Positions 1 to 57,892 of a stretch of DNA of 64,000 nucleotides are shown one piece after another. The notes under the pieces were generated by a model. That model was given only the letters and a program-made list of their open reading frames with translations. It ran no database searches and had not been told where the DNA came from. The number at the start of each line of letters is the position of its first letter. The stretch's first letter is position 1. The stretch is taken from contig NC_092346.1 in the NCBI RefSeq assembly GCF_963676685.1, positions 82,150,001-82,214,000 on the forward strand. Reading direction: 5' to 3'. The stretch comes from Mytilus edulis (lineage: Eukaryota). Both the position numbers and the translations under genes were made by a program.

Positions 1-628
1 AGTTATCTTGCTATGGACTATTCAAATGCTTTTGAACATTTTTCCAAAAAATGATGCTTAACTTATCAGTGTTAAACAGAAAGAAAGAAAGGTTTAAATA
101 GATGGCGACTTCTACATTGGTTTTGTAAATAATACATTTATAAATATTCCTTGGTAATTTACAGTATTTTATTTTTTATTTCAAGGAAGATTTTGAGTAG
201 CTCGAAGATTCTTTATGTGATCGATTGAAGATTTGTTTTTAGATTGGTTCTTTTTAAAATCACGCGACTGTCTTCTTTTATTTTGTCTTGGAATTGTCTG
301 TTCTTATTTGACATCATTTAAGATTGGCCTGTTATCATCATTTTACAGCAGCTTGCACAGTGTTTGTCTTTTTAATATTCAGATATCACGAACATTACTC
401 TTGCTCTTAAGACAAATATTCGATACATTTACAAAAACAGACCCTTCCTAACCTTTAATTAACATAAAAGTGAAAATATTCTAGAAATAACTTTAAATTA
501 TTGTACAAGTTATAAGTGAATTTTAGTCAAATTTTGTTTTGTACAAGCACTTTTTGTACAAATTGTAATCAAAACACAATTTATAATTCGTACCATTTTT
601 TTGGTACAAATTATAATTTTTTACGAAT

Positions 629-960
629 AAAAAGTCAAATCACAAAAATACCAAACGCCGAGGAAAATTCAAAATGGAAAGTCCCAAATCAAATTGCAAA
701 TCAAAAGCTCAAACACAACAAATGAATGGGCTACAACTCTCATATTCCTGACTTGGTACATGCATTTTCTTATGTAGAAAATGTTGGATTAAAATTGTTT
801 TCATATCTAACTAAACCTCTCACTTATAAGACATTATTCCATTATAATGACAACTATGTGTGAACAAAACAAGCAGACATAATAGGTAAAAAAGACAAAA
901 ATTGGGTTACAGCAGCCAACATTGTGTTATTATCTTTATCCCTATAAAACAATTAAATAT
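629..960 (+). repeat. High-copy interspersed repeat family
   Basis: aaaagtaaaatcacaaaaatactg...ggaaagtccctaatcaaatggcaa recurs at 5730-5843 and 44417-44620, and inverted at 44070-44275 and 49260-49437. Confidence 0.8.
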
Positions 961-2847: not shown

Positions 2848-3126
2848 TCAACATACCATATCTAGATAGACACAGCTTGTTCTGTTCTTGTTGTTCGGAA
2901 GAATACCGGACCATTCTGGTCTCGACCAGTATATTCTAAACCCTGCTTCAAACAGCTTTCTCAAGTGTTTTAGTGCTGACAAATACTTGATTCCAGACTT
3001 AGGATCTCCATAACTAATCCGAATAGATAGCTGTTGTATTTCATTGAGCATACCACTTTTTATCACCTGCTCCACAATTCTCTCAGTAAGGTTGCCAACA
3101 TCAATAATTAGTATACCCTGGCCATT
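2848..3126 (-). CDS. METTL24-like (Methyltransf_22-type) protein, terminal exon
   Basis: Acceptor ctcttgatag, phase 0. Reads NGQGILIIDVGNLTERIVEQVIKSGMLNEIQQLSIRIS...LKHLRKLFEAGFRIYW...TSCVYLDMVC*, resembling the METTL24 C-terminal pattern (ILKxDxE, GxLxxIxQLxxE, LxxxGFR, SCY). Confidence 0.7.
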   Translation of the reverse strand, partial: NGQGILIIDVGNLTERIVEQVIKSGMLNEIQQLSIRISYGDPKSGIKYLSALKHLRKLFEAGFRIYWSRPEWSGILPNNKNRTSCVYLDMVC

Positions 3127-3887
3127 CTATCAAGAGTGAAATAAGCATGTACATTTAACAGTTAAGCATATAAACATCCGATAAATACTGAACAGACAAA
3201 GGGATATAATATTTTTTGAAACATTTTGAAAAAAAACATCATTATTTTTTAAGTATGCCAATGTCTTTCTGTTTTCTAATGACGTTTCTATGTGTAAATC
3301 CCATTATATAAACTGCTTAATAAAGGAATTAGGTAATGAACGATTCACTAGGAAACTCAACATGAACCCGAATGGCAATCACAAAGGTGGAAATCCTGAA
3401 TAAACGTATGTATATTTCTTTTTACTTTTAAACAAACAAATAAAAACTGGATCGTCTTTCAATGTATTGAATACATAAATTACATAAGCGTCCTTACAAA
3501 CAAAGTTAAATTGTGGGCTTTTCCGAGTGCTCTAAGAAACGTCTTTCAAAATGATCAACATCCATCAGCGCTTAAGGTGGATCAGGACTATTCGACTGCG
3601 CACAATTTCACGCATGAATTACCATGCATAAGAAAAGTTTGTGTCGTAAATCTTCTTTTATTTTTTTAAATATTTTGATTGATTAAAAATGTTAAATTAT
3701 TGTACTTTTGCCACTAACAAATTATTATCGTTGATATGTGTATCTGTGGAAGACTCAAAATGACATTTCACCCAATTTCACCATTGTCCCGCCAAAATTT
3801 TGGGTTTAAGGCCAAACATTTTTTTTAGGTTTCGGCGACCTATGTTTTTTATTTGCTTATTCTTTGAAGCAATATTTCAGATTTTTG

Positions 3888-4615
3888 AAAGTTTGGTAAC
3901 TATGTTCAACGCATCTTTTCCATCCAAAATCAAATAAATGCTATCAAAGATACATATTAGTCTGTATCATATCTTGATTTACATCTAGAAATTGACATTG
4001 AGGGTCGGTTGAGAACTACTAATCAAGAAAAAAGATGATTCCTACTTCCGATTGTGAATTTTCCTTTTCTATGTTTCAAAATTCCAACAACACCTGAATA
4101 TAGAGTATATATCTACAGTTGAAACGAAATTCAATCGCTTGCATTTCCTATTACGATTCAAGAAAGCTTTTAAACCAAGAGTTCCAAGTGGGGAAGATAA
4201 AGATATCAATTCGAAAATGTTCGAACAGCGGTATACTACTGTTGCCTTTATTTACGCACGCCATTCCGAATGGGTTGGTATGAAAGATCTGTTTCACAGA
4301 TGAAGAATGATATGTTTCAATTGTCATTACTACAATCCTGACCTCTTTTCTACGAATGTAACCTATAGAACAAGACTTATCATTGGGTTTGTACTTGCAG
4401 CATGAACAGCACGATGGTGACACACGAAGAGCACATGTCATTGCCCTTACGGAGCATCTGAGATCACCACCAGTTTTTGGTGTTGTTCCTATGCTTAGTC
4501 TTTAGTTTTTTATTTTGTGTTTTGTAAACTGTTATTTGTCTTTTGGTAGTTTTTCTATTTTTAGCAATGACCTTGTCAGTTTGAGTGTCGTTTTTGTATC
4601 TTTCGCCTCTTTTAT
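3888..4615 (+). mobile_element. Degenerate Penelope-like retroelement 3' fragment
   Basis: Diverged copy of 51214-51949 (SYLDLHLEIDIEGRL...), with stops and frameshifts. Confidence 0.7.
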
Positions 4616-7600
4616 TGCATTTGGTTGTTAAAAAAAGGAGGGATTCGTTTAACTTTTGTTGTGTTGTATTCGTTCTATTTTTACAATGAGCATATGCGTT
4701 GTTTCTATCGACAACAGTCTTCTCTATTCATTTACTAGTACAATGTTTGCATTTCATATTCCAGATACCTTAGTTAACCTCGTTTTAGTTTTAGTTTGGG
4801 TCATGTTACATAATCTTTCGTTTCTTTCTTGTACTGTGGAATTCTACTATGTTCGTTTTTATTTAATTGATGTTTATGGCGTAGCAGTTAAGGTTGCAAA
4901 TTTTGATGTTTTTTGTCGTTGACACGTTCTAATTAATTTAAGCATATAACAAAACAATACAGTTCAACTTTGAAAGCTGTTCTATGGTCAGGAGAAGTGA
5001 TGAACACAAAATCTCCTGTCTTATATCACCATAGTGAAGAAAAAAACATTTCTTTTCGATCGCTTTTTCTACATATTAACACTACGTATTATCGTGTACA
5101 CATACCAATACCCAAAAATTTCAAAAAATTTCGGGGATAACAAAATCCTTATATACAGTCATATAAAACGAGATTCTTGAATTTAAATGTTAAGGAAATA
5201 ATTTAACCAATACATGTATATGTTCCGGACCATATAAATATTTGGACCATACGCGAATGGTGATCCGATGGTCCGACGATGCGCGTATTATTTTGTTTTT
5301 GTAGCCTAATAAGGATAGTATTCTCCATTATGATTTCACACAGAACATAAATCAGTGGTTTATGTATAACTCAAAGTTTATTATTTACCCTCAAATCAGG
5401 TTGTTTCTCTGTCTTTCATTAAAAGCTCCAGGGGATGAAATTGCCGATATAAGAGAAATCTAAAAAGTGTTTGCTAAGTACTTTCCTGTATTTAGTTCTT
5501 GTTATTTGGTTTGTGAAGATGACAAAAATGCTATACCAATTTGCTTTTCACTGCATAGCTCCATTCATCAAGCTTTGTGGGTTGACCTACTATTCTATTG
5601 TTACTCTTTTCTGATGCATATATTTCATTTGTTCCAATTTTTACGCTTAAATGAAGGAATAAACAAAAGATAATTATAAATAAAAGTCTAAAGATGTGTT
5701 CAACGGTACTAACATATGATCGTAATATACAAAGTAAAATCACAAAAATACTGAATTCAGAGTAAAATCAAATCGGAAAGTCCCTAATCACATGGCAAAA
5801 TCAAATGACAAAACACATCAAAAACGAATGGACAACAACTGTCTAAGAGAATTTTAGAAAATTGTGCTGTCAATCAAATAGCCTTCGTCATAGAGTTATT
5901 TTGATATCTTCGAATTTTTATCCACAGTAACTTACAAAAATACAAGTATATAATTTATTCGTATATATATTTAATTATTATAATAGTGTAACCCTCGCAT
6001 TAATAAATAATTTATTTTTGCATGTGGTGTAGTAAAATGTTGATGCACTCGTTCTATTGCTAGAACCCTTACCTTTTTAATCGATACATTCGGTAGATTT
6101 TCCAACTGGGGCTTTTAACATATTTAGATTTTTTTCTCGTATTAAGCAAGATCTATCTTCATAGTATAGTATGTAGTTTGTAATACTTCCTGTATATCAC
6201 ATTGAGTTCAAAGTGTTTGTATTTATTTATTGTTGTTTAAATAACGATCAGTGACAAGTATTTTATAAATAAACAAGACAAAACAAATTAGAATACAATA
6301 GACAGTTTCTGCAAAGCAACCAAGATAGAAGGCAGCAGAATTTAGACAACAACTGGAAAAATATACAAGACATGTTGTTTAGATACAGAATGTTGTCAAA
6401 CCTAATGAATTTGTTTTAAACTACTCAATTTTCCATCTAATGTGAATCCATAATTTGTATGGTTTATACATTTTATAGCTGATACTCTTCTTACTACAAA
6501 GATCGTCCCGAGAAAACGCAATAACTGTCAAATAAACCGTTTAGTAACCTACACTCATTTCAGATATCTTAGTTCACCTTTGACAGAGTTATTTCGGTAT
6601 CTTCGACTTATTATCCATAAGAACTTACAAAATACAATTATATAATTATGTATCAACACTTTTGATATGTGTTCTACTTATTACCTACGTCGAAGCGACT
6701 TATAGTACGTACTTCTTGGAACGTATTACTCAAATTGACGTACCAAATATAAAACGGAATGACTTTTCTTTTAAGTTTATGTTTTTTATAATAATATACA
6801 AAGCAGGTTTAATAATTGTAACACTTTTATGAAGACTTGTGATCAAATAACAGCCATGTATCAATGTACCTTGGTGTATGGCTGTGAACGTTGATCTTAT
6901 AAGTCATGTTGATACTCTGGATATTTTCATAATCATTTACTGTGCTACAAAAAATAATCAGTGTGTTATATCTTCGCATTGTTTTCAAATATCATATAAT
7001 GCATGTTATATTTCACACAAATAAAAATTACTAACAACTAGCAGTAGCATGCACTTCTCCCTTTTAAGAGATCAGAACATTTTCATAATAATTGAAATGA
7101 TTTTGTAATGCTCATACGTTGGATACTAAAAGTAGTACATTGCAAAAGAGTAAAAATCTTAAAGGATATTATTTATTCTCATAAGATATTGCGAACTCAA
7201 ATAGTAATTGATAAATCTTATAAAATAAAGCTATAATCCCATGACATAATCAAACACAAACAGGAGTGTAAGTGTTCCTGCTACCGTAGCTATATATTAG
7301 ATGACATTGGGAAATATAATTGGGAATGTGTCAATGCGACAACAATCCGACCATAGAGCAGACAACATCCGAGTGCCACCAATGGGTCTTCAGTGTAGCG
7401 AGAAACTTCCGCACCCGGAAGCGTCCTTCAGCTGGCCCCTTAAAAAATATGTATTTTTTACAGCTATATACTAGTATTATACTATATCTTGTGTGTAATA
7501 TGTTTACAATCGTTAACACATTCATTAATTGACTGACAGTTAGAAAAAGAATTTACATTATATACTACTTTGCACAAATTAATAATGAAGTAACCCCGCC

Positions 7601-10620: not shown

Positions 10621-11228
10621 AAAGGAGTAGGTTCAGTAAGACCCCTTTTGGCCCCAAAATATAGCAGTTTTAGAAATTTGTGAAAAGGTAATCGTTAAGC
10701 AAATTTTTGGAAAGTAAAATGCTTCTGCTACATAAATATGAGCTGGTTTCTACAATACAATGCACAAATTTTGCGTTCTAGCATCATTAAGCCATGCTAA
10801 ATTACCTAAATCTTCACAATTTTAGCATTTTGGTTAATTTTTAGACAGTTTTCGTCTAAAATGAAAGTGGCCGCATTCTTGTTCATTCATAATATTGAAA
10901 TATAAGTTGTATTTCATGATAATACAAAACATAAATAAAGGTTGAGGATGAACACGGATGCGGCCACTTTCATTTTTGGCAAAAACCATCTGAAAAGTGA
11001 CGATTTTTGGCATATTTGATAGATTTTTCGTATTTCAGCTTGAATCGTTTTGCGTGTTTTGAACGTTTTTAATGACTAAATCAGTTAAAATCTTTCACAT
11101 AAACTAATCGAATCAATTGAAATAGACACTTAAGTATTTAAAGAGGCTTTAAAAAGTGTCCAAAAAACTTTCATTAGATGAACCTGGAATTTGAGGCCAA
11201 AATCGGCCCTTACTGGACCTACTCCTTT
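10621..11228. mobile_element. Non-autonomous TIR element (MITE), copy 1
   Basis: TIRs aaaggagtaggttcagtaag ... cttactggacctactccttt; second copy at 37443-38026. Confidence 0.85.
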
Positions 11229-37442: not shown

Positions 37443-38026
37443 AAAGGAGTAGGTCCGGTAAGGGCCGGTTTTGGCCTCAAAATTCAAGTTCATCTGACGA
37501 ATTATTATGGACACTTTTTAAACACTTAAATGTCTATTTCAATTGATTCAATTATATTTTGTGAAAGATTTCAACTGATTCACTCATTAAAAACGCTCCG
37601 ATTCAAGCTTGATTATGAAAAATCTATCAAATATGCCAAAAACTGTCACTTTGCATATGGTTTTTGTAAAAAATTAAAGTTGCCGCATCCGTGTTCATCC
37701 TCGAACTTTATATATGTTATGTATTATCATTAAACACAACTTACATTTCAATATCAAGAATGAACACGAATGCGACCACTTTCATTTAAGACGGAAACCG
37801 TCTAAAATTTAACTAAAATGCTGAAATTGTGAAGATTTCAGTAATTTAGCATTACTTAATGATGCAAGTACCCGATATATGTGCATTGTAATGCCAAAAT
37901 AAGCCTATATTTATGAAGCAGAGGCATTATACCTTCCAAAAAACAACTAAAAGTTTACATTTACACAATTTTGTAAAACTGCTATATTTTGGGGCCAAAA
38001 AGGGGTCTTACTGAACGTACTCCTTT
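37443..38026. mobile_element. Same MITE family, copy 2, opposite orientation
   Basis: aaaggagtaggtccggtaag ... cttactgaacgtactccttt; the interior is a diverged reverse complement of 10621-11228. Confidence 0.85.
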
Positions 38027-39446: not shown

Positions 39447-40581
39447 GAACAGGTTCCAAATTTATTCAGACTTAATTTTTTCAAAATATTGTGGGGTTGC
39501 CAAAAAAAATTATAATAGCTAATTATAATACAACCGGGGTTTTTAAGCAAACCTGGGGTAAGTTAAATTGGCGTTTCTCACGAATAAATTTGGTTCTATT
39601 ACATAAAACAACTGAAACCATTTGTTTTGGAGCATTTATTGTTCGTTTAATTTATCTTTTACCCGGATAATAAATAAAGGTCCGTCCTTGTGATGTGATA
39701 TGAGGTCTATTAGGTTTTTGAGTGTCCAATGAAAACATTCCTAGTTTAGTATGACATTCGGAGTTTAGTATGACGTCCATTATCACTGTACTATTATGCA
39801 TATTTTAGGGGCCAGCTGAAGGACACCTACGGGTGCGGGAATTCTCGCTACATTGAAGACCCATTGGTTGCCTTCGGCTGTTGTTTGCTCTATGGTCGGG
39901 TGGTTGTCGCTTTGACATATTCACCATTTCCTTTCTCAATTTTATTCATTTGAAGTTTGCATTTATAGTATTGGTTCCTTTTTCAGAAGGATATGACATA
40001 AAAAAATAAAACACGATTTTTTATTACTTCTTAATAAATAAAAAGGTAATGGACTCGCAAAAAAAGAATTGAAATATTGTAATGCAATTAAAATGTGACT
40101 TTGAGAAATATAAAACAAGATGTTGGTGTACGTCAATGAAACAGCAACCGAACAACGCAAATAGCTAAAAATCTTCTACAGGTAGGGACACAGTACTCCC
40201 GACTAAAATCCAAATTATATAAATATAACTTTTCTGTTAATAGTGACTGTACTTGAATTGAAACAATATTTGTGACTTCACAAAGTTGACATCAGACAGT
40301 TTTGACTGCTGAAGTTTAGCTCTTTTAATTAAGTAATATTATTATTTTAATATTGACTTTAAAAACTAATTTACCTCATGAATGTTATTCCAGAAAATAT
40401 ATCTGAGATTCTTTCACATTTAAAACGATGCCATGTCTTGTTTCATAACGGCCATAAGCACGTCGGTTTGACAACTACACCACGTTTAACATTACAATTT
40501 TATTTAATTATGACATCAACATACTAGTACATACTTCCTTTATTTCTATGGTACATTCAACCTATGCCAACATTTTGAAAC

Positions 40582-43500
40582 TAGTCGGACTATGTGCTCT
40601 ACGTCGTCGTGCCTTTATATATTTTCAAAATGCAAAATTTAGCAACCTGACATCTATGCGCACTAAATTGGTATATATACTAACACCAGATACATGATGT
40701 TAAGTTGAAACTAAAAAATAAATATAGCTCTAAGAAATAAGTTTTAAAGACCCTTACATTAGCTACTAGTATATACGAAATGAGAGACAGGCGGTCAAAT
40801 GGGAACGGGTAAAAAGAGTATGCTTCCGGCATATTGTTGTCGGACCGAAATAAATATCAAGCGTATAAATATGGTAATGTTCTATTTACAAGGCATATGT
40901 TTGAATACGCAGTTCATAGTGGAATGTATAATTGTGAAATCTCAAAAAAGTATATCAATTCCAACTCAAACGACAAAAAACACCAAGACATTAAAAAACC
41001 CGTATTTTCCATTTTTTTAAAATATCAATTCCTAATGAAAAAAGATATCATCAACACATTCAATTACCTACATTTTTACTATTTCGTGTATAAATGTTTT
41101 TAGAAATTGGACAAGATTAAATAAAATGAAAGATGGTAGAGTAAATAAAAAAGTGTTTATATGGGGAAACACATGTAAAAAAGTGTTTATATGGAGAAAC
41201 ACATGTAAAAAAGTGTTTATATGGGGAAACGCATGTTTTTTTTTTGTTTTTTTTTCCCATCGCATGCGGTAGCCCCGCTATCAGGTCGACCACGTACCTT
41301 CTCAGCCGCGGGTAAGCCATTTATATGGATAGTCGACCTTCGTATGGATAGAAACAAGTGCCTGTGATCTGTAAATACAAAATGTTAAACCAAATTAATG
41401 AATGTCAAATAAATACTACTACTGTAACAGTTCGCTGGCAACAGTTGTAAAAATCTCCATCCGTGCGGAACGCTGATCGATTAAATTCCTTTAGTTGTCT
41501 AAGTTGTCAAGTGATAAAGCAATACACATTCGCCTTCACAGGTTTGCTGACCGTGCATGATTCAGTTGACATTTGTAAATTGACTTTCACTAATATTATA
41601 TAACATCATATTTAGTATGACGTAGTATGAGCCTCCCGGTAGATGTGCGTATTATGAGAAATATAAATTTCAAATATACCTTTCAAATATCAGGGTTGCA
41701 CAGTCGTAAATTCGCTTTTATAATATACATTATAGCAGTTGGCAAGGAACTGTTCTAGGTCAGGTGTTATTTAATAAATGATATCATTGATATATTGGAT
41801 AATCGAGTGTTTGGCCAGTAGAAACATCCAAACGATCAGATGCGTAGTGTACAATAAAGAAGTATCATTTCCGTCATATAAAGAACAGAGAAGATTATGT
41901 TTTCAGTTGCATTGACATAGCACCAAAATATTTAAAAACTACCAATAAATATAAAAGTGACTTTCAAATTTCAACTTAAGTGTGAATGAATATAAATTCA
42001 TGTCTATCATAGTGTTAACGGGTGTCACATGTGAAGCTGGATCTGTTTACCTCTACAAGGTTATTGAGATAACCCCCAGTTTATTGGGTTGGGGTTTGTG
42101 TTGCTCAGCCTTTAGTTTATATGTTGGGTTTTGTGTGCTATAGTTTGTCTTGTAAGTCTTTTGGTCTGTTTTGTTCTTTTTTTGTTTGTTTTTTAGTCAT
42201 GGCGTTGTCGGTTTAATTTTTGACTTCTAAGTTTGAATGTCCCTTTTGGTATCTTTCGCCTCTCTTTAAATGTTTTCAACTAAAGTAAAACAGGATGTTG
42301 AATGAGTGACACTATTTTCAATTGTAATATTATGAAATAAAATTCACAGTTACTTGTAGAGAAAATTGAGAGAAGAATTAAGCGGCATGATATTAAAATC
42401 AGTGCGGACAATTTGATTTTGAAAACTCTAGGACCTGACTACGACATACTTGGTGAGGGCACCATTGTGCAAATCTTCTATCCATGTAAGCTAATAATTT
42501 TCCGTTATTTGTTTAACGTCAATTCGTATTTAATGATTTCAAATTCTAGATGTATTGCTTTTCGAACGTTAATACCAAACAGCATACTACAGTATGTAAT
42601 CGGATGAGATAGACTTTGTACAGTGAGTGATTTTGTTAATTTTTTACATAAAAATAAAGTAAATTAAAGTTTTTATTCTGGTTCATGGGTTTCCTTATCA
42701 GTTGTTGTCCATACACCATTATCGTCAGGGGCGGATCCAGGATTTTGCAAAGGTGGTGCGATTTTTTTTTTAATTCCCCGAGCGGAGCGAGGCGAAAAAG
42801 TTTTGGGACCATTTTTTGGCTAAAAAACATAAAATAAGTGTAAAATGCACGTTTTAAACGGTTCGTGACGTGGGGCATGTATATTTTATAGTTGCTGTTA
42901 AGTGTAAGGGTTAGACATTTTTGATGTTGTATTCTCCCCATAAATTGTCTATCATAAAATGATAGTATGGGTCAAAAGCTATGAACTGATATATTTCATG
43001 TGGGACTTGTCAGTAAAAAATAGACATGGAAAATTCTCGCTTGTTGTATGTTAAGTTAGCATAAATTCACAGATTTCCTGTTGTAAACAAGATACACGCC
43101 GCGCTATTCGGTGAATTTTACAACACGAGTGACACGAGTTAAAAAAGATAAACAATATAAAAAAGAAGATGTGGTGTGATTGCCAATGAGACAACTATCC
43201 ACAAAAGATCAAAATGACACAGACATTAACAAGTATAGGTCACCGTACGGCCTTCAACAATGAGCAAAGCCCATACCGCATAGTCAGCTATAATAGGCCC
43301 CGATAAGACAATGTAAAAGCAATTTTTATACAAATGTTTGGTTGATATGTTTTACCCAACAAAATTGTAAATTAACCATAGGCTACGAATGAGTCTGAAA
43401 TGACAACGAATTTATGAATGACGGTCGACAAATGGAGACATAAATCCCACACCCAGCAGGCAGGTTGCAGTCTGATCTTGATAACAGTATTCAATATATC

Positions 43501-46500
43501 AGTTCATGCAAACCCCCGTCCTAAAAAAAATACGCCCGTTTTTTTATTCATTATATTCATTTAATGCTTTATTATTCTGTTGGAAATTTTCGTTCAAAAA
43601 ATGGACAAGATTATTGTTTTCAATCCAAATACGGCCAGAATTTTTGTTTAAGGCAAAAAGTAGAGTAAGATTTGTTCTCTCAAATATCTCAGACTGCCTC
43701 CTCAAACAAATGGTTCGTACCTTGCACTTTAAATCTATCCAGAGCTTATACTGACTGGGGATAATTATTCAGTTATGTTATTTTAAGATAGGCGCGGGCG
43801 TTTGGGGTTAAACATAATTTCGTAGGTAAATAATATTAATGTGGAACTTTTTTTCATGAGAGTATAATAGAGTATAACTTTATGTTTGGTTGAATTGTGA
43901 AATAGAAGTCAATACGTTCTTGCTCACTCCTTTGTCGCCTTGAAGGTGTCATGATTTTTCATGCTCAGAATTGCAAATGTGTTCCTGTAAATTGAATTTC
44001 AAAATGACTGAGGGACGTTTTTTCGACGAACTGGTCAACTCAACCATACCGAATCACTCTACTGTGATGCGACTGTCATATAAGTGAGAGGTTTAGCGCT
44101 ATAAAACCAGGTCAAACCATCATTTTCTACATTTGAAAATGCCTGTACCAAGTCAGGAATATGACAGTTGTTGTCCATTCGTTTGATGTGTTTTATCATT
44201 TGAATTTGCCATTTGATTAGGGACTTTCCGTTTTGAATTTTCCTCGGATTTCAGTATTTTGTAATTTTACTTTTGACATAATCAGTAAATAATCAGTAAA
44301 TACTGAAAAAAAAGAATTGTCTCATAAAAATTAAATACACGGGAAATGGCAAAGTTCACGAAGTCTAGTCTAATTCTTTTTTCGCCAGTATTTACTGATT
44401 ATTTACTGATTATGTCAAAAGTAAAATTACAAAATACTGAAATCCGAGGAAAATTCAAAACGGAAAGTCCCTAATCAAATGGCAAATTCAAATGATAAAA
44501 CACATCAAACGAATGGACAACAACTGTCATATTCCTGACTTGGTACAGGCATTTTCAAATGTAGAAAATGATGGTTTGACCTGGTTTTATAGCGCTAAAC
44601 CTCTCACTTATATGACAGTCGCATCACAGTAGAGTGATTCGGTATGGTTGAGTTGACCAGTTCGTCGAAAAAACGTCCCTCAGTCATTTTGAAATTCAAT
44701 TTACAGGAACACATTTGCAATTCTGAGCATGAAAAATCATGACACCTTCAAGGCGACAAAGGAGTGAGCAAGAACGTATTGACTTCTATTTCACAATTCA
44801 ACCAAACATAAAGTTATACTCTATTATACTCTCATGAAAAAAAGTTCCACATTAATATTATTTACCTACGAAATTATGTTTAACCCCAAACGCCCGCGCC
44901 TATCTTAAAATAACATAACTGAATAATTATCCCCAGTCAGTATAAGCTCTGGATAGATTTAAAGTGCAAGGTACGAACCATTTGTTTGAGGAGGCAGTCT
45001 GAGATATTTGAGAGAACAAATCTTACTCTACTTTTTGCCTTAAACAAAAATTCTGGCCGTATTTGGATTGAAAACAATAATCTTGTCCATTTTTTGAACG
45101 AAAATTTCCAACAGAATAATAAAGCATTAAATGAATATAATGAATAAAAAAACGGGCGTATTTTTTTTAGGACGGGGGTTTGCATGAACTGATATATTGA
45201 ATACTGTTATCAAGATCAGACTGCAACCTGCCTGCTGGGTGTGGGATTTATGTCTCCATTTGTCGACCGTCATTCATAAATTCGTTGTCATTTCAGACTC
45301 ATTCGTAGCCTATGGTTAATTTACAATTTTGTTGGGTAAAACATATCAACCAAACATTTGTATAAAAATTGCTTTTACATTGTCTTATCGGGGCCTATTA
45401 TAGCTGACTATGCGGTATGGGCTTTGCTCATTGTTGAAGGCCGTACGGTGACCTATACTTGTTAATGTCTGTGTCATTTTGATCTTTTGTGGATAGTTGT
45501 CTCATTGGCAATCACACCACATCTTCTTTTTTATATTGTTTATCTTTTTTAACTCGTGTCACTCGTGTTGTAAAATTCACCGAATAGCGCGGCGTGTATC
45601 TTGTTTACAACAGGAAATCTGTGAATTTATGCTAACTTAACATACAACAAGCGAGAATTTTCCATGTCTATTTTTTACTGACAAGTCCCACATGAAATAT
45701 ATCAGTTCATAGCTTTTGACCCATACTATCATTTTATGATAGACAATTTATGGGGAGAATACAACATCAAAAATGTCTAACCCTTACACTTAACAGCAAC
45801 TATAAAATATACATGCCCCACGTCACGAACCGTTTAAAACGTGCATTTTACACTTATTCTATGTTTTTTAGCCAAAAAATGGTCCCAAAACTTTTTCGCC
45901 TCGCTCCGCTCGGGGAATTAAAAAAAAAATCGCACCCCCTTTGCAAAATCCTGGATCCGCCCCTGACGATAATGGTGTATGGACAACAACTGATAAGGAA
46001 ACCCATGAACCAGAATAAAAACTTTAATTTACTTTATTTTTATGTAAAAAATTAACAAAATCACTCACTGTACAAAGTCTATCTCATCCGATTACATACT
46101 GTAGTATGCTGTTTGGTATTAACGTTCGAAAAGCAATACATCTAGAATTTGAAATCATTAAATACGAATTGACGTGAAACAAATAACGGAAAATTATTAG
46201 CTTACATGGATAGAAGATTTGCACAATGGTGCCCTCACCAAGTATGTCGTAGTCAGGTCCTAGAGTTTTCAAAATCAAATTGTCCGCACTGATTTTAATA
46301 TCATGCCGCTTAATTCTTCTCTCAATTTTCTCTACAAGTAACTGTGAATTTTATTTCATAATATTACAATTGAAAATAGTGTCACTCATTCAACATCCTG
46401 TTTTACTTTAGTTGAAAACATTTAAAGAGAGGCGAAAGATACCAAAAGGGACATTCAAACTTAGAAGTCAAAAATTAAACCGACAACGCCATGACTAAAA

Positions 46501-48469
46501 AACAAACAAAAAAAGAACAAAACAGACCAAAAGACTTACAAGACAAACTATAGCACACAAAACCCAACATATAAACTAAAGGCTGAGCAACACAAACCCC
46601 AACCCAATAAACTGGGGGTTATCTCAATAACCTTGTAGAGGTAAACAGATCCAGCTTCACATGTGACACCCGTTAACACTATGATAGACATGAATTTATA
46701 TTCATTCACACTTAAGTTGAAATTTGAAAGTCACTTTTATATTTATTGGTAGTTTTTAAATATTTTGGTGCTATGTCAATGCAACTGAAAACATAATCTT
46801 CTCTGTTCTTTATATGACGGAAATGATACTTCTTTATTGTACACTACGCATCTGATCGTTTGGATGTTTCTACTGGCCAAACACTCGATTATCCAATATA
46901 TCAATGATATCATTTATTAAATAACACCTGACCTAGAACAGTTCCTTGCCAACTGCTATAATGTATATTATAAAAGCGAATTTACGACTGTGCAACCCTG
47001 ATATTTGAAAGGTATATTTGAAATTTATATTTCTCATAATACGCACATCTACCGGGAGGCTCATACTACGTCATACTAAATATGATGTTATATAATATTA
47101 GTGAAAGTCAATTTACAAATGTCAACTGAATGATGCACGGTCAGCAAACCTGTGAAGGCGAATGTGTATTGCTTTATCACTTGACAACTTAGACAACTAA
47201 AGGCATTTAATCGATCAGCGTTCCGCACGGATGGAGATTTTTACAACTGTTGCCAGCGAACTGTAGTAGTATTTATTTAACATTCATTAATTTGGTTTAA
47301 CATTTTGTATTTACAGATACCTAATAAAAGTTATATTTGGACGACTCATTTTAAGAGAAAATGGCCCACAATTAAAACCACTCCTATTTAGTCTTTCTGG
47401 TTTGGTGACTTTATATCTTCACCCAGTTGGCGATAGCTGTTGTGTCCCATTTTTAATGCGACAGTACAGTTAAAACATACTCTATTTTCAATATCAATAT
47501 TTTCGTAACGGCCAGTTTCAATTCTGATGGGCGTTACATCACATGTAAATTTTGGTAAAGCACTCCTGTATCTATTCGGTATATTAAAAATCAGATAACT
47601 TTCTACACCATATACATCTTTGAACATTCCATATGTACGTAATTTATTTTTATCATTTGACATAATTTTGTCATACCATCCTTTAATTTTTTCTAAAAGA
47701 TACATTTTCTGTATTCTTTATCAAATCCTTGTTTAAATAGCACCATTACACAATTATTTCATATTAAGTTCTTTAAACTTATTTTTTACACTAGAATGCC
47801 AATATTTTTACTTTTTACATGTGTTTCCCCATATAAACACTTTTTTACATGTGTTTCCCCATATAAACACTTTTTTACATGTGTTTCCCCATATAAACAC
47901 TTTTTTATTTACTCTACCATCTTTCATTTTATTTAATCTTGTCCAATTTCTAAAAACATATATACACGAAATAGTAAAAATGTAGGTAATTGAATGTGTT
48001 GATGATATCTTTTTTCATTAGGAATTGATATTTAAAAAAAATGGAAAATAAGGGCTTTGTAATGTCTTGGTGTGTTTTGTCGTTTGAGTTGGAATTGAGG
48101 TACTTTTTTGAGATTTCACAATCATACATTCCACTATGAGCTGCTTATTCAAACATATGCCTTGTAAATAGAACATTACCATATTTATACGCTCAATATT
48201 TATTTCGGTCCGACAACAAAATGCCGGGAGCATACTCTTTTTACCCGTTCCCATTTGACCGCCTGTCTCTCACTTCGTATATACTAGTAGCTAATGTAAG
48301 GGTCTATACAACTTATTTCTTAGAGCTATATTTATTTTTTAGCTTCAACTTAACATCATGTATCTGGTCTTAGTATATATACCAATAGTGCGCATAGATG
48401 TCAGGTTTCTAAATTTTGCATTTTGAAAATGTAAAAAGGCACGACGACGTAGAGCACATAGTCCGACTA
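40582..48469. repeat. Large inverted repeat: inner arms 41367-44305 / 44386-47318, outer arms ~40582-41231 / ~47810-48469, 80-bp spacer
   Basis: Mirror ORF pairs have coordinates summing to 88691 (43506/45185, 42636/46055, 42413/46278). Arm ends were read directly as reverse complements. Confidence 0.97.
47440..47800 (-). mobile_element. LINE ORF2 C-terminal fragment (L2/CR1-like, clade uncertain)
   Basis: KLRTYGMFKDVYGVESYL...RSALPKF...IRIETGRYENIDIENRVCFNC, a typical post-RT region preceding the zinc knuckle; truncated. Confidence 0.8.
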
Positions 48470-51213
48470 CTCCTTCTACAGTGTACAATTTCAAGGTGGA
48501 ACTTTTATAATGCAACAAGTGGTTTACGTATAGAGAATGCATATATATGCACAGAAATGTTTAATTTCATAATTTTTCAAGAATGACAGAATGTGGAACT
48601 GTGTCTTTTCAAAAGTATTTTTGAATACAGTTTGCAAGTTTTGTCCGCAACTACGCACACAACCTCTACTTTTACATCATACAGAGTATATACTAATATA
48701 TTAAAAAATTGTATTATTGATATAATTTGTATTATTTTATCTATCACTTTTACAACTAACGGAATATATTTTTGATTAGTAACCTGTTTTATATGGCTGC
48801 ATTTAAAATGTGTCTTTTAGACACAACTCTTTGCAGATTGTATTGTATCGTCCTGAACATGCCACTGCACGTTTTGCAAACTCAATTATATCAATCAATT
48901 CAAATTGTACTTGAAAATCACGGTTTACTTAATCAATTTTTGAAGACAGGGGAAATGAAAACAAAATAACAAACAACATACAAACCATTTACATATTTTT
49001 TCAATACCTCCGAGTAAAAATAATGCACACTCAATACTGTATTCAGTAACGTCATATTTTTTCTGCCAAATTCTATGCATATCGGTCAACTTTGACGCAA
49101 TTTATCTAAAATACAAGGACGATGACATGTGTCTCTGTACATGCACGGAATCGCTATAAAATCCTGGAAATTGTTAGTTTTTAGACTTTCTTGGTGTATA
49201 AGAGATCGTTATGAATTAGTGTCGTTTTCGCTACTATGATGTGTATGGAATTTTATGGAATTGTCATACTAGTGAGCGGTTATGATAGCTTTAACAACAG
49301 GTTTAATCTACCATTTTCTTCATAAGAATTTGCCTGTACCAAGTCGTTTGATGTATATATGAGCTTTTGATTTCGCCATTTGACTTTTCGCTTTCAATTT
49401 TCCTTTGAGTTATGTATTTTTTGTTATTTTACGTTTTAATAGGACTTACTTGGATCTTTTTATTAACTAATTTAATAAAATAATTGTTTTCCAGCTAAGT
49501 TTTGTTAAATATTATATACATTTTTGACTCCCTCTTCTCCATCTTTCTCCTTTCTCCTGTCCCTTCTCTCCTTTCTCTCGCCCCTCTCTCCCTGTCTCCC
49601 TTTATCCTGTCCGCGCCCTCATATATCTAGCAATCAGGCATAAATGTGAAAAGCTGAATTAGTGCACCATGCCCACAGCATGATTCTATATAATTCTACG
49701 ACATATTTTAATCAAAGGGTATTATATTTATATTCAAAGAAAGACCGAAATTATCCGAAAAATGTTTTTTTTTTTTTTTTTTTATAATTTACATGTACCT
49801 TACTTGTCACCGTACTATCACACATCATTGGGATTCGAACAAAATATGTTTAAATGAATTCCGCATTAGATTTTAAAATGATAAATTTTGATTTGGAAAT
49901 CTACCATTGACGTCATACACGAACGATATCACTTCATTTAAACTAATACAATAAACATATACAGCAGTATTTGTTAAGATCATCATAACTTTAAGTTGAT
50001 GATACCCCTCCCCCCCCTTTTCTCTCTCTCCCCACCCCATACACACGAAAAAGATTTAATTGACACTATATCATTGATTAAAAATGTTTTATAATATGCA
50101 TATATTCCTATTTCTATATAATATGCCTGATAATTTGTTTACAAGCCATTTGCAGCACCTGAGACCATCCCTAGTTTTTGGTGGGGTTCGTGTTGCTTAT
50201 TCTTTGGTTTTCTATGTTGTGTCATGTGTACTATTGTTTGTCTGTTTGTCTTTTTCATTTTTAGCCATTACGTTGTCAGTTTATTTTCGATTTATGAGTT
50301 TGACTGTCCATCTGGTATCTTTTGTCCCTCTTTTTTTTTTGCTGAAGCAGTTTTTTCAGTATGTTATATTGTGACTCAGTTCATACGACGGATGCAGTTT
50401 ACATGTTACAATTATCTGTTTTAGTATATCTTTTTTTATTTTAATCTCATCATGCTTTATTGAAAATTTGAACATTTGTTAGTTAGATACAGAAAGTAAT
50501 GGTATCGTCAAACATTGGATTGCAGATTTAATAACACTGGTAACTAAGAAATTGTTAGTATTCTAAATTCTGAAATATACATTTTTATATTACCATATAT
50601 CCATTGTTTCAATATTATTGTTCAATAAAGAGAAAACTACGTTTTAGAGGGAAAGAAAAAACAAAAAAGAAAATACTAAATAAGTAAAAGAAAAAAGAAA
50701 AAAAAGCAAATTATATATAAAAAAAATACCAAAACTGAATTTTGGATTTTTGGCAGTAGTATATTGGTCAAAACTAAAATGTGTCTGAAAATACATCATT
50801 TAGCACATTTGAGAAAGGATGGTTTTCTGTTGTAATTTTTTTACAAGAATAAACAGATAGTAATACACATACATGTGGTTGTTAGCACAAACATTTAAAC
50901 AAACAAACATATTACACCATATTACAAATTACTATATAAAACATATATGGTGGTGAGGAGAAGACTAAACACTGTATCATTACGTAAGTTGTTTTATTAT
51001 AAATTATTCCAGTAAAGGAAGCCAGGGGTCCCAACAGAGATTGGCAATGTGAAGAGGCCTAATTAACAAAAATAAATTCTTTTCTAGTATTCGATTTTCT
51101 TTAAGGCAATTGTTGAGACCTGTAAAATTTACTTGTTTTTCATATAATTTTTTTCTATAAATTAAAAAAAAATCTGTTTTTCCTCAGTTTTCAAAATAAA
51201 TTATAAATAATTC

Positions 51214-52116: not shown

Positions 52117-52274
52117 TCAACTAAAGTTTGGATTAGATTTCCCATTCAAATCGTATTTGCTTGCTCGCTTTCTCGATGAATCACTACAACTGTATACAAC
52201 AATACACAATTGTAGAAATATAACTCCACACAAGGTTCCAACTACAATCCAGAAATTCTGCTTAGTGTAAAAAT
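52117..52274 (-). CDS. Laccase-like gene, terminal exon: transmembrane helix plus cytoplasmic tail
   Basis: Acceptor tttttttgcag|AT completes G+AT=Asp, matching the phase-1 donor. Reads DFYTKQNFWIVVGTLCGVIFLQLCIVVYSCSDSSRKRASKYDLNGKSNPNFS*. Intervening small exons are not excluded. Confidence 0.8.
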
Positions 52275-54040: not shown

Positions 54041-54827
54041 TAGGTAAACGTCTGTAAGAAAACAATCGAACGGTAAAAAAACATACAACTATAGAGGTCA
54101 AAATACGTTCAACAGGGAAAGGACTTTACAATATGTCAAGGTCTGCATCGCTCTAAGTTTAGACAAGCTGTATAGAAATTTCACAGAGACTATCCAAAGT
54201 GTCCTAAAAGGATAAACCTAATAAAATGAACTAAAGAAAATCTCTAACTGAAGACAGCCACATGAGCTCTCGATCTGTGGACAAAAATGTTTAAACAAAT
54301 CTGTTTCATTCAAAGCACGTGACTACATTATAGAATTAAAATAGATAACTGTCGCTTTACATCATTCGATGTTAGATTGAGTGAGAGATTTGTTTTTCAA
54401 CATGCACTGTCAGCATTCTGTGATGATATGTTTTTTTGCTAAACTTCTGTGTTTTGTTGTCTAATAAGCGGGTACATGTATTGAGATCTCACAAACATGT
54501 TTAACTCCGCCGCATTTCTGCGCCTGTCCCAAGTCAGGATGAATGATTACAAGGCTAGATTAATCGCGTCACATGTTCTTTTAAGGTATTTTGGAAAAAT
54601 CAAAATTTGACAAAGTGCTATACATGGTCGTGATAAAATTGCTTAACCTGCTCTGTTTAAACTCTTTCGGTTTTATACTTAAAACACGTTTGTTATGAGT
54701 TTAAAACTTTCATTGGCATTATAGTAATGTCCATATCAGAATAGATTTATCTATTTCAAGTGTACTTTTGATAACAGATTGCTATTGAATCATTGAATTA
54801 TACACCGGTCCATGAATATGAACTTAC

Positions 54828-56817
54828 CAGCATTAGTGGTTCCAGTTTCTTGATTGATAGGAAATTTTGATGTCATTGATGAAGGGGTTGTAGATGGTTG
54901 TGGTTCGTTGTCAGGATAACTATGACAATTAGGAAATCCCGTGGGTGGTGATGGGTGATGAGGAAACGATTCATTAATAAGCATGGCCATTCCATCATTC
55001 GCATGAAGTTCAATGTGACAATGTAAGAACCAAACGCCAGGATTATCTGCTTTAATACGGGTTATAACATAACCTCCACTTGGAACAATAATTGTATCCT
55101 TCCTTACTGGTTTTAGTAATTCCAATCCTGGCACATTTCCGTTAGCCCATGCTGGATTACTCCATGTAGCATTGTTGCACCAACTATTGGCACGATCAGT
55201 TCCTCCTCTACAATCGATGTCAGAATTTCCTTCTAGTTTTAATCCTGTTCTGTTATTATGGTTGGCATATCCCATTTTAAGGACATAGAACGTATGCCCG
55301 TGCATATGAACTGGATGCGCCCATCCTGTTCCTTGTCCCATATTTAGAAAAATCATTTGGACTGTATCACCATGGTTAATAGATAAAGAATGCGTACAAA
55401 AACAATGTTTCTGTTCGCCACAATCTGCTTCCTCACAAGGAAAGTTGGCATAATCAGGATCAGCCAAAACATTTTTTGTTGGAAATACGAACCTTCGTCC
55501 ATTGATAGTACTTGGAAAAGACTTAATTCCGGGAAAAGCAAAGTTTAAGAAATATTCCTTGAATTTTCCTTGATGAACAGGTGGAGCAGGGTCAGTATCA
55601 GATTTTAGTTTCAAACCATCAATAGGTAAACAATCGGTAAAATATTCTTCTGGGTAATATGGAAAGAAACAATTTATAACAACACATCGGTCGTCAGCTG
55701 TACACTGCCGAGGAACAGACGTTGGTTGTACATTTTGATTGGCGCCATGATAATGAAGTATAGCTTCCGCTGTCGTGTTGCGGTTTATTTCGAGAGTTTT
55801 GGCTCTAATGTAATAATTATCCACGGTTTGGTTTGCGGTAATGACGAAATCGTATCGTTCTCCGGCATTTATTATAAATGCATCTGCTATCTGTGGTTCA
55901 ATATCAAACCCGTCGGTGGCTATTATTGTTAACGGGTGGTTATCTACAGAAATAGACCAAGGAAATAACTGTCCTGCTGCTATCACCCGGAACCGGTACT
56001 GTTGGCCTTGTTCTACAGTGAACACCTCAAGTGGAGCCTCATTATGACTATTTTCATCAGTATAATATCTTCCGCGTCCATTAATAAGACCACTTTGCGC
56101 TTTTATATTACTAAAAAATTGCCCGTCAAGTGACTGAGAGCTTTGGAATTTTTTTCTGTTTTCATAAAATCCAAATACCATTTTTGCATCTTCCAAATCT
56201 GCGTCAAAGTCATGATTCCATTCCTGTATAGTCATTATATGTTCCTTCATTTCCAAACTTGTTCTCTCACGGACAATCAATGCGCCAATCAATCCCTTTG
56301 CTCTTTGAGCCCCAACATGAGAATGATACCAGTAAGTTCCTTTAAGTGATGCAACAAATCTGTAGACAAACGTTTGGCCAGGCGATATTGGGCACTGTGT
56401 TAAAAAGGGTACTCCGTCCATATACGGACTTCCCTTTTGAGTGATTCCATGCCAATGAATTGTAACCTCTTCCGATTTAAGGTGATTTGTTACGTGAACA
56501 ATGATTGTCTGGTTTTCGTATACAATAATAGGCGGACCCGGTAATGTACCATTCGCCACAACAACCAAACGAGAATCCTCCCATCCATCTGCTGTTATAA
56601 CATCATTTATAGGTATAGAGTTTGATTCATTTATATTAGTCACGTCATATTTATACAGCCTCCCTTCTGCTGAGTATACAGCGACTTTTTTATGCATCAT
56701 TGTCAAACGATGAGATATCAATAAAGATGTTTCACATGTTTCAGCTGACTTTTCACATTCATAGCTGATAGCACCATGAATTAAAAAGACTGCACAAATG
56801 GAGACAGACCTCAACAT
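54828..56817 (-). CDS. Laccase-like multicopper oxidase, main coding exon (signal peptide, three cupredoxin domains, S/T/P-rich stalk)
   Basis: ORF 54790..56868 contains HWHG, WYHSH, HPVHMHGH and HCHIELHANDGM. Acceptor ttgtatttttcag precedes 56827. ATG at 56817 starts a signal-peptide-like MLRSVSICAVFLIHGAIS. Donor CTG|gtaagt follows 54828 (phase 1). Confidence 0.95.
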
Positions 56818-57892
56818 TGCAGAATATCTGAAAAATACAAAGATAAGGTTAACACATATCACATCCATACAATGTGAGCTAGTTGTAAAAACAGTGCACT
56901 CAGAGAAGGCAACTGCACACCAAATTACTGAGCATCTGAGATCAACTCAAAATGTTTCATGTGGGCTTATTTTTCTACTAATTGGGATTGATTTCTGTTT
57001 TTCAACTTTTTATGTATTTAGCCATTTCGTTTTTGTTTCAGCATGGCTTTATATTTCCTCGTACAATCTATTGATATTCTGATTGTCATTTTGGTTCTGC
57101 ACGTTGGAAATAAATAAATAGTCCTCCCCTAATCGTTCGAACTAGATAAAAGTCCTCCTCTAATAATTTGAATGTCGAAAAATATTGATAAAATTTACAT
57201 TAATCAACAAATGAGCTAAGCGTATGAGTAAAACATCAGTGTTGTTTTAGACACAATTTTGCAAAAAAACTATAATTTGATAACTTCTTTTTGATACATA
57301 TTAACAACGGTCTTGCCAACACTAGCTGCTGTATCACATCAGGCCGGGCAGGAAAACAAAGATGTATTCCAGTATTTCGTTGTAACCCATGTAGTAGTTA
57401 AACTCTACATATTTGAATAAATGTTTATCCCCGACACATTTTATATTTGCTTGTCTCCAGTCAGGAGCCTGTTTTAATGGTTGGCGTTTGTTACTGTATT
57501 GTATATTTGTTTTTCGTTTGTTACTGTATATCATATTTGTTTTTCGTTTGTTGCTGTATATAATACTTATTTTTCGTTTGTTTTTTTTGTACAAAAATCA
57601 GGCCATTATTTTCTTCTCGTTTGAATTGTTATTGTTTGAATTACATTTTGAGATCTTAAGGGCTTGCTATGCGATATGGATTTTGATCATTGTTGAAGGC
57701 CTTACGGTGATCTTTAGCTGCTAACATCTAAGTCAATTTGGTGCCTGGTGCATAGTTGTCTCATTGTCAAACATACCACATCTTCTTATTTTATCTTTTA
57801 AATGTCTTAAGAGTCACTATCGACTTGTTCCCTCACATTAATAGGCGACTGTTACTTTTGTTTAAATGTTTATATTTGATTATGTTTCATTA

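What the first reader, a model, noticed from the sequence alone, without database searches (positions are those of the whole stretch)
40582..48469. ~7.9-kb genomic palindrome with 2.9-kb near-identical arms and an 80-bp spacer
Seen: the inner arms differ by only about six substitutions and one 6-bp indel that I could spot (near 41407, 41425, 41487, 41559, 42515, 42754, 42832). The arms contain ordinary intergenic DNA and repeat fragments, with no gene, transposase or flanking TSD. Known: long palindromes with short spacers are unstable (hairpins, cruciforms, breaks). Inference: a recent inverted duplication or one maintained by arm-to-arm conversion, and a possible long-dsRNA source about 3.6 kb downstream of the laccase stop, where read-through transcription could reach it.
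Basis: partly seen in the sequence, partly recalled or inferred. Interest (0 to 1): 0.8.

Follow-up and report, generated by a model that had tools for sequence, protein, structure and literature searches.

The report
Old inverted duplication of transposon debris
A 7.9-kb stretch of mussel intergenic DNA made only of broken jumping-gene pieces is present twice, head to head, and looks like an old break-repair accident whose inner halves have been kept nearly identical by copying between them; it carries no gene and is a fairly ordinary structural feature.

Summary
The palindrome is in the sequence as described. It spans 40582-48469. The inner arms are 41367-44318 and 44372-47318 (99.5% alike), with a 53-nt loop. 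The outer arms are 40582-41236 and 47817-48469 (95.9% alike). Unequal blocks of 130 and 498 bp lie between the tiers.

The arms consist only of fragments of dispersed repeats. They have no Pfam domain, no target-site duplication and no second copy in the genome, so this is not a mobile element.

Repeat-family continuity shows two novel joints, at 40581|40582 and 44371|44372. The right arm sits in its native context. The loop is native sequence of the left arm, inside a truncated hAT-like element.

Contigs of three independent DNA runs, under three organism labels, carry the left joint. Their inner-arm contigs have 1.7-1.9 times the depth of the flank contig. This argues against an assembly fold-back, but no listed contig crosses the centre, so that joint remains unverified.

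Best reading: an old break-induced inverted duplication. Its inner 2.95 kb was homogenised by arm-to-arm conversion, which stopped at a later insertion/deletion in the left arm.

There is no sign of transcription in the one RNA-like run laid. The scan holds a sister note on this same window (s1-838135) and none on other DNA. Interest is low to moderate.

The parts
40582..41236 (+). Left outer arm. Holds a family A fragment (40583-40984), an unassigned piece, and the start of family B with three 30-bp tandem units (41146-41236). Its outer edge 40581|40582 is a novel joint inside family A.
   Evidence: Contigs of X1, X3 and X8 run across 40581|40582.
41237..41366 (+). Left-only 130-bp block. Its last 48 nt (41319-41366) are a very high-copy unit that ends exactly at the inner-arm boundary. 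It replaces 498 bp that the right arm still has.
   Evidence: Depth bin 41250-41449 is 35020 in X3, against about 100-260 in the four bins before it (40450-41249).
41367..44318 (+). Left inner arm. Family E (41394-41713), family C (41743-42725), and family D, a hAT-like TIR element that starts at 42726, carries a nested insert at about 43153-43324 and is truncated at the centre.
44319..44371 (+). Loop of 53 nt. It is family D sequence contiguous with the left arm only. 44371|44372 is the second novel joint.
   Evidence: All 8 D copies examined align straight through 44318|44319 and depart at about 44372. The joint is unique in the genome.
44372..47318 (-). Right inner arm, the reverse complement of 41367-44318. 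It keeps the family-D state GCG where the left arm has AAA.
47319..47816 (-). Right-only 498-bp block: 143 bp with no other copy found, plus the body of family B (47462-47816). B is intact here, which is the ancestral arrangement.
   Evidence: together: the two matches are adjacent in other B copies, e.g. on C9 at 4771096-4771535.
47817..48469 (-). Right outer arm. Its edge at 48469 is not a joint, because the family A copy continues into the flank.
   Evidence: Other A copies align without a break across 48469|48470.
48470..49622 (-). Continuation of the native family A copy outside the palindrome. It has no partner on the left side.
   Evidence: matches to query positions 1-1153. (no copy in 1-40581).

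Best explanation
This is a real, old inverted segmental duplication of about 3.8-3.9 kb of intergenic DNA that was already a mosaic of dead transposon pieces (families A, B, E, C and D, from outside to centre). A break inside the hAT-like element D, about 100 bp from its 3' end, was repaired so that a second copy of the neighbouring DNA was joined head to head. This is fold-back or sister-chromatid-fusion type repair. A 53-nt single-copy loop remains, the 3' end of D was lost, and there are two novel joints (40581|40582 and 44371|44372) with no visible microhomology. Later a high-copy element hit the left arm at 41366|41367, and 498 bp were replaced by 130 bp. Since then the arms have exchanged sequence by intrachromosomal gene conversion only on the inner side of that block. 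The inner 2.95 kb has therefore stayed about 99.7% alike, while the outer 0.65 kb drifted to 96%. Shown: the anatomy, the two joints, the native side of each, non-mobility, the two divergence tiers, and presence of the left joint in other samples. Inferred: the repair pathway, the order of events, and gene conversion.
For: (1) The arms, loop and sharp ends are established.
(2) The same unique order of repeat fragments in both arms shows one duplicated segment, not independent insertions.
(3) Family A runs uninterrupted across 48469|48470 to about 49622, as in other A copies, but starts abruptly at 40583 on the left. Family D runs uninterrupted across 44318|44319 in 8 of 8 copies examined and leaves at about 44372.
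(4) The centre joint occurs once in the 1.37-Gb assembly (36-mer with up to 3 mismatches; 30-mer with up to 2 mismatches), so the structure is not a repeated element.
(5) The 3' rest of D is absent from the whole window, as expected if the break lay there.
(6) Substitutions are 25 of 653 in the outer arms against 9 of 2946 in the inner arms (p = 2e-12). Within the inner arms, 3 of 193 sites next to the heterology differ against 3 of 2741 further in (p = 0.005). This is the edge effect expected of conversion.
(7) In one search, contigs of 693-695 nt in X1, X3 and X8 (three organism labels, three studies) run across 40581|40582. Inner-arm contigs have 84.2, 158.8 and 11.8 depth against 44.1, 91.6 and 6.1 for the flank contig. 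An X8 contig at 41397-41787 carries the three right-arm-specific states, which shows the arm differences are real variants.
(8) Fold-back inverted duplications with a single-copy spacer are a described outcome of break repair (abstracts of PMC3907307, PMC10622511 and PMC11724301).
Against: - No listed contig crosses 44371|44372. Only the longest pieces are listed, and the expected unitig is about 60 nt. The centre joint therefore rests on this assembly alone.
- The tool warns that contig depth is not a copy number.
- Described fold-back events show short inverted sequences at the spacer boundary. Here both joints read as blunt (0 nt). The only candidate is a weak 7-nt inverted match in the D family consensus, which is not statistically notable in AT-rich DNA.
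- The arm native at the outer end (right) is not the arm native at the loop (left). A simple one-step snap-back does not fit. Either two switches or ligations in one event, or a later deletion of the left arm's outer part, must be assumed.
- Gene conversion is inferred from divergence alone. No orthologous arms from another species were compared.
- An X1 contig joins the GCG state to the forward loop, a combination absent from the assembly. The centre is therefore polymorphic or differs between samples.
Confidence: 0.6

Rival explanations
1. Two separate events. An old inverted repeat (today's outer arms) once flanked a single-copy middle. Much later the middle itself was duplicated in inverted orientation, or overwritten once by a single long repair tract. 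On this view the inner arms are simply young and there is no ongoing conversion.
For: There are two sharply different divergence levels, with a block of non-homology exactly between them. Six clean substitutions in 2.9 kb are what a young duplication would show.
Against: A second duplication would have to end precisely at the inner edges of the older repeat on both sides. On the right arm, the order B / 143 bp / E / C / D is one continuous native mosaic. The rise of differences towards the heterology edge (3 of 193 against 3 of 2741) fits repeated conversion better than one event. A single long conversion tract is only a special case of the main reading.
Confidence: 0.15
2. Assembly artefact. 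The inner arms are one real copy written twice, through a fold-back chimeric long read, a flip-flop inversion between the outer repeats tangling the graph, or a misjoin of two loci inside the high-copy element D.
For: The centre joint was not seen in any independent data: one search lists none and one search is blank. The join lies inside a family with thousands of copies (11768 first-look candidates). An X1 contig shows a centre variant that the assembly lacks.
Against: The arms differ in a structured way, with a gradient and a 6-bp indel, and these differences recur in an independent sample (X8). The outer arms, with 3.8% divergence and a 130/498-bp indel, cannot be read chimeras. Both flanks are distinct and continuous, with no N in the window. 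Inner-arm contigs are 1.7-1.9x the flank contig in 3 of 3 DNA runs. No alternative haplotig of the locus exists in the 2368 contigs.
Confidence: 0.12
3. A foldback-type or long-TIR transposon: a mobile element whose long inverted ends carry 30-bp subrepeats.
For: Long inverted termini with three 30-bp tandem units in each arm (41146-41236, 47817-47907). The ends could be read as flanked by TA.
Against: The right 'end' is not an end, because family A continues across it. There is no target-site duplication beyond an uninformative TA. The centre joint is unique in the genome. No other locus in the scored matches joins A and B. No transposase is present.
Confidence: 0.03
4. A selected hairpin-RNA locus. 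Read-through from the multicopper oxidase gene, or an own promoter, transcribes the palindrome into long dsRNA that feeds small-RNA silencing of families C, D and E. Selection, not only conversion, would keep the arms alike.
For: The geometry allows it: the minus-strand gene ends at 52117, 3.6 kb upstream of 48469. The arms consist of transposon sequence. The structure seems to persist in three organism labels.
Against: X15 has zero depth on the outer arm and on 41450-41849 and covers only high-copy pieces. Only one RNA-like run out of the 3 holders marked RNA? was laid, and none is a small-RNA library. Nothing in the sequence marks a promoter.
Confidence: 0.05

Closest known systems
Fold-back (break-induced) inverted duplications, as sequenced in human patients and made experimentally in yeast (PMC3907307, PMC10622511, PMC11724301; abstracts read)
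   Same: Two inverted copies of a contiguous chromosomal segment. A short single-copy spacer is contiguous with one copy. Sequence beyond the break is lost. The segment is host DNA, not a mobile unit.
   Different: The arms are 3.9 kb and interstitial, whereas the described cases are large, often terminal, duplications followed by dicentric breakage. No short inverted sequence or microhomology is visible at the spacer boundary. The arm that is native at the loop is not the one that is native at the outer end, so an extra switch or a later deletion is needed.
Sex-chromosome palindromes kept over 99% alike by arm-to-arm gene conversion (abstracts or listing entries of PMC3723533, PMC8600007, PMC8981503 and bioRxiv 10.1101/800185)
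   Same: Arm identity is far higher than the age of the structure predicts. Differences concentrate at the edge of the homologous block.
   Different: The arms are 3 kb rather than 10 kb to over 1 Mb. They hold no genes and the chromosome is unremarkable. The spacer is 53 nt rather than kilobases. Conversion is inferred here and not shown by a between-species comparison.
Foldback transposons and long-TIR derivatives of DNA transposons (recalled, no call)
   Same: Long inverted termini containing short tandem subrepeats.
   Different: It is single-copy, has no target-site duplication, and one 'terminus' is the interior of another repeat copy.
Palindromic chimeras of long-read sequencing and assembly (recalled, no call)
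   Same: Near-identical inverted arms with a very short centre.
   Different: The arm divergence is structured and recurs in other samples. The outer tier is 96% alike with a transposon indel. The structure lies in the interior of a chromosome-scale contig, and arm depth is about 2x.

Membership tests
Fold-back / break-induced inverted duplication | Two inverted copies of one contiguous segment | tested here: met
   The same order of repeat fragments occurs in both arms.
Fold-back / break-induced inverted duplication | Single-copy spacer that is native sequence continuous with one arm | tested here: met
   The 53-nt loop is family D sequence continuous with the left arm in 8 of 8 D copies aligned.
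Fold-back / break-induced inverted duplication | Short inverted sequence or microhomology at the spacer/duplication boundary | tested here: not met
   Read, there are 0 nt of microhomology at 44371|44372 and at 40581|40582. Only a 7-nt inverted match exists in the D consensus, and the actual sequence at the joint does not retain it.
Fold-back / break-induced inverted duplication | Loss of sequence beyond the break | tested here: inconclusive
   The 3' end of D (about 100 bp) is absent from the whole window. No ancestral allele is available to measure a deletion.
Palindrome homogenised by arm-to-arm gene conversion | Arm identity higher than the age of the duplication allows | tested here: met
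   25 of 653 outer against 9 of 2946 inner differences, p = 2e-12. The left joint is shared by three organism labels.
Palindrome homogenised by arm-to-arm gene conversion | Concerted change: lineage-specific states present in both arms | not testable with these tools
   Only de Bruijn contigs were available. They collapse the arms and pop variants.
Foldback / long-TIR transposon | Several copies with the same termini, and target-site duplications | tested here: not met
   The centre joint is unique in the genome. No TSD. The right boundary lies inside a family A copy.
Assembly fold-back chimera or misjoin | Arms identical apart from random errors; one real copy, so arm depth equals flank depth | tested here: not met
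   The arm differences recur in X8. Inner-to-flank contig depth is 1.9, 1.7 and 1.9 in X1, X3 and X8 (the tool cautions that depth is per contig).
Assembly fold-back chimera or misjoin | Centre joint absent from independent reads | tested here: inconclusive
   No listed contig crosses 44371|44372, and 19699 further pieces were not shown. The JGI metagenome scan was blank.
Hairpin-RNA (endo-siRNA) locus | Transcript covering both arms, and small RNAs | tested here: inconclusive
   X15 has zero depth on locus-specific parts. It is one run, its RNA status is guessed, and no small-RNA data were used.

The most novel reading that the evidence does not exclude
A near-perfect 3-kb palindrome with only a 53-nt loop has persisted across several mussel taxa. 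It persists because it is used: read-through or local transcription would fold it into a long hairpin RNA that feeds small-RNA silencing of the hAT-like family D and families C and E. Arm-to-arm conversion, together with selection, would keep the stem intact. This would make it an invertebrate hpRNA-type transposon trap born from a break-repair accident.
Probability: 0.05. Interest if true: 0.6.

Novelty: new member of a known kind. Interest (0 to 1): 0.3.

Why it matters
The locus is a clean natural example with three useful properties. Its origin can be read from transposon continuity, which shows which side is native at each joint. A later transposon insertion/deletion marks the boundary between homogenised and freely diverging arm sequence. 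It also seems to have survived with a short loop in several mussel taxa. It could serve as a small test locus for conversion-tract limits and palindrome tolerance in a highly polymorphic invertebrate genome. It has no gene content and no evidence of function, so its wider importance is modest.

Tried and rejected
Transposon reading. I first took 40582 for the terminus of a repeat family, because several matches start at query base 2, and considered a TA-flanked long-TIR element. Searches showed that the same family runs on across the right boundary, so 40582 is a breakpoint and not an element end.

'Unique' core. After I noted 41367-41742 as unique. One search corrected this: 41394-41713 belongs to a small family with 10 other places at 80-89% identity.

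Microhomology at the centre. The D consensus suggested a short inverted repeat at the loop boundaries. One search showed that no other D copy has the window's letters at the joint. Reading the joint base by base gave 0 nt of microhomology, so I dropped that claim to 'weak'.

Concerted substitutions. Sites 44752, 44918 and 45136 differ from the assembly in all three DNA runs. In X3 their depth is 191-6034 (thousands at the first two), so at least there the contigs come from other D copies. No inference was drawn.

Independent copies of the locus. The JGI metagenome scan for the centre joint gave 0. Exact look-up of 7 arm ORFs gave 0 of 7 in the collection. A homologue search with the 101-aa ORF across the C|D joint found no candidate.

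Scan notes and literature. Searches of the scan's notes gave 0 findings by words and only other kinds of palindrome by genome. A paper search for 'Mytilus' plus 'inverted duplication' returned 0 papers, so I found nothing in print on such structures in mussels within that library. Paper supplements were not consulted.

(bacterial promoter/terminator scan) is meaningless for an animal genome and is not used.
Full report
OBSERVATION. The palindrome exists as described. The repeat finder and BLAST of the left half against the reverse complement of the right half give these figures:
- Inner arms 41367-44318 and 44372-47318: 2953 columns, 99.49%, 8 mismatches, 2 gap openings.
- Outer arms 40582-41236 and 47817-48469: 655 columns, 95.9%.
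- Between the tiers, 130 bp on the left (41237-41366) face 498 bp on the right (47319-47816).
- The loop is 53 nt (44319-44371).

Nothing pairs beyond 40582 or 48469. The window has no N. The only other inverted pair of 200 nt or more in the 64 kb is an 84% repeat pair 26 kb apart. In addition, a cluster beside the loop reads AAA on the left against GCG plus one base on the right.

WHAT THE ARMS ARE MADE OF. The window is C3:82150001-82214000 of a 1.37-Gb assembly in 2368 contigs. Earlier notes of the scan call it a mussel, and one holder run is labelled 'mollusc metagenome'. Searches of this genome resolve each arm into repeat pieces. From outside to centre they are:
- Family A: 40583-40984, about 70-87% to its relatives.
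- Family B: the start is in the outer arm with three 30-bp tandem units, and the body is at 47462-47816 on the right arm only, 82-92% to its relatives.
- A 143-bp stretch with no other copy found: 47319-47461.
- Family E: 41394-41713, with 10 other places at 80-89%.
- Family C: 41743-42725, 73-95%.
- Family D: from 42726, 88-95% over its longest matches, with 11768 first-look candidates and a nested piece at about 43153-43324.

D begins CAGGGGCGGATCCAGG, and other copies end with the complement of that motif. That such termini are typical of hAT elements is my recollection, not a test. Eight ORFs of 70 aa or more lie in the region. Five were scanned against Pfam and none reached a cut-off.

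WHICH JOINTS ARE NEW. Other copies of family A align without interruption across 48469|48470 and on to about 49622. In one copy on C5, for example, the match to the arm and the match to the flank abut at 94972050|94972051. The right 'end' of the palindrome is therefore just the point where the copy stops. On the left, family A begins abruptly at 40583, so 40581|40582 is a breakpoint.

At the centre, 8 of 8 D copies examined align straight through 44318|44319 and the loop. They then continue for roughly 100 bp to their own terminus, while the window turns into the right arm at 44372. The loop is therefore native to the left arm, and 44371|44372 is the second new joint.

That joint is unique in the genome. 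A 36-mer with up to 3 mismatches and a 30-mer with up to 2 mismatches each hit once. The missing 3' part of D is nowhere in the window. Read base by base, neither new joint shows microhomology. The D consensus has a 7-nt inverted match near the loop boundaries, but this is weak and is not what stands at the joint.

The left-only 130 bp end in a 48-nt very high-copy unit whose last base is 41366 (depth bin). The right arm keeps B intact. The left arm is therefore the altered one: a later insertion there was followed by loss of 498 bp.

IS IT REAL? One run search listed 24 runs. Fourteen of them, under organism labels A, B, C and 'mollusc metagenome', hold half or more of the sampled words. All are kept as contigs. 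I laid four of the 24 (X1, X3, X8, X15) on 40450-46440.

For the structure:
- Contigs of 695, 695 and 693 nt in X1, X3 and X8 run from the left flank across 40581|40582. The next contig (40587-40740) overlaps each of them.
- An X8 contig at 41397-41787 carries the 6-bp gap at 41421 and the right-arm letters at 41487 and 41559. The arm differences are therefore real variants and not assembly noise.
- Inner-arm contigs have about twice the depth of the flank contig: X1 84.2 against 44.1, X3 158.8 against 91.6, X8 11.8 against 6.1.

Against, or limiting:
- The tool states that contig depth is no copy number.
- De Bruijn contigs collapse the arms and pop variants, and the X8 outer-arm contig is a mosaic of left and right letters.
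- No listed contig crosses 44371|44372. Only the longest pieces are shown and 19699 are not.
- An X1 contig (44231-44365) joins the GCG state to the forward loop, a combination not in the assembly, so the bases beside the loop vary between samples.

Attempts to find other assemblies of the locus were blank. I put the chance of an assembly artefact of the inner arms at about 0.12.

HOW IT AROSE. The structure belongs with break-induced inverted duplications. In the fold-back model, a broken end pairs with itself and is filled in. This leaves a single-copy spacer at the loop (abstract of PMC3907307), and in yeast it uses Pol delta synthesis (abstract of PMC10622511). In yeast the other end can be captured by end joining (abstract of PMC11724301).

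Two variants fit the anatomy, and I cannot separate them:
(a) One complex event. The DNA between 40581 and the right arm, including the 3' end of D and the original loop, was replaced by an inverted copy of loop plus right arm up to 48469. Both joints would be blunt, for example fusion of unequally trimmed sister ends followed by capture of the 3.8-kb piece.
(b) A fold-back from the left arm produced a longer palindrome, and the left arm's outer part was later deleted at 40581|40582.

Variant (a) needs no extra event and explains why the rest of D is gone. Variant (b) fits the described pathway more closely. The lack of microhomology is a real departure from the described cases.

WHY TWO TIERS. 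Substitutions number 25 of 653 in the outer arms against 9 of 2946 in the inner arms (p = 2e-12). Inside the inner arms, 3 of 193 sites next to the heterology differ against 3 of 2741 further in (p = 0.005). The simplest account has three steps: one duplication, a later insertion/deletion in the left arm, and arm-to-arm conversion that cannot pass that block and seldom reaches its edge. Arm-to-arm conversion is well documented for large sex-chromosome palindromes (abstracts listed). Here it is an inference. The rival, a young second duplication or one long repair tract, is not excluded (0.15).

FUNCTION. None is indicated. A three-domain multicopper oxidase ORF lies on the minus strand (54790-56868), so read-through could geometrically reach 48469. 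However, the RNA-like run X15 has zero depth on the outer arm and on 41450-41849 and touches only high-copy pieces. That is one run with a guessed library type, so the hairpin-RNA idea is unsupported rather than refuted. On stability, the 53-nt loop and the mismatches beside it make hairpin attack less likely than for a perfect palindrome. In yeast, the Mre11 complex is constrained to loops under 9 nt (abstract of PMC8053094).

VERDICT. This is a new member of a known kind, a small palindromic segmental duplication of transposon debris. Interest is 0.3. The scan's own sister note on this window (s1-838135, two-tier divergence) agrees with my measurements. No like finding on other DNA turned up.

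Noticed in passing
window 39756-39953: A roughly 195-bp element with many 99-100% identical copies on at least eight chromosomes. It looks like a very young, probably still active short mobile element.
   Followed up: no
window 41319-41366: A 48-nt very high-copy unit that elsewhere occurs as closely spaced pairs in both orientations, e.g. on C13 around 69422686-69422823. It may be the same kind of thing as the transposon excision scars noted elsewhere in this genome (s1-832309). This was not tested.
   Followed up: partly
L007-L010 (C9:32267023-32270310, C5:94969782-94973069, C5:60714779-60718066, C3:2418570-2421857): Four copies of more than 3.28 kb that are 99.7% identical to each other. 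They contain diverged family A sequence plus pieces like family D and its nested insert. This points to a recently active composite element.
   Followed up: no
window 42726-44371 and L013-L020: Family D is a non-coding TIR element of about 1.55 kb (first 16 bases complementary to its end) with 11768 first-look candidates in the genome. This copy has a nested 150-170-bp insert at about 43153-43324.
   Followed up: partly
G000 C5:16708525-16716785 (L004-L006): Three family A-like copies lie within 8 kb in mixed orientation (-, +, +). This may be another local rearrangement cluster.
   Followed up: no
window 47388-47705 (minus strand): A 105-aa ORF inside family B. Its end has a C..C motif that reminded me of the C-terminus of LINE ORF2 proteins (recollection only). 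Pfam gave nothing above cut-off.
   Followed up: partly
window 10642-11047 and 37599-38004: A 406-nt inverted pair, 84% alike and 26.5 kb apart. These are probably two copies of one repeat family.
   Followed up: no
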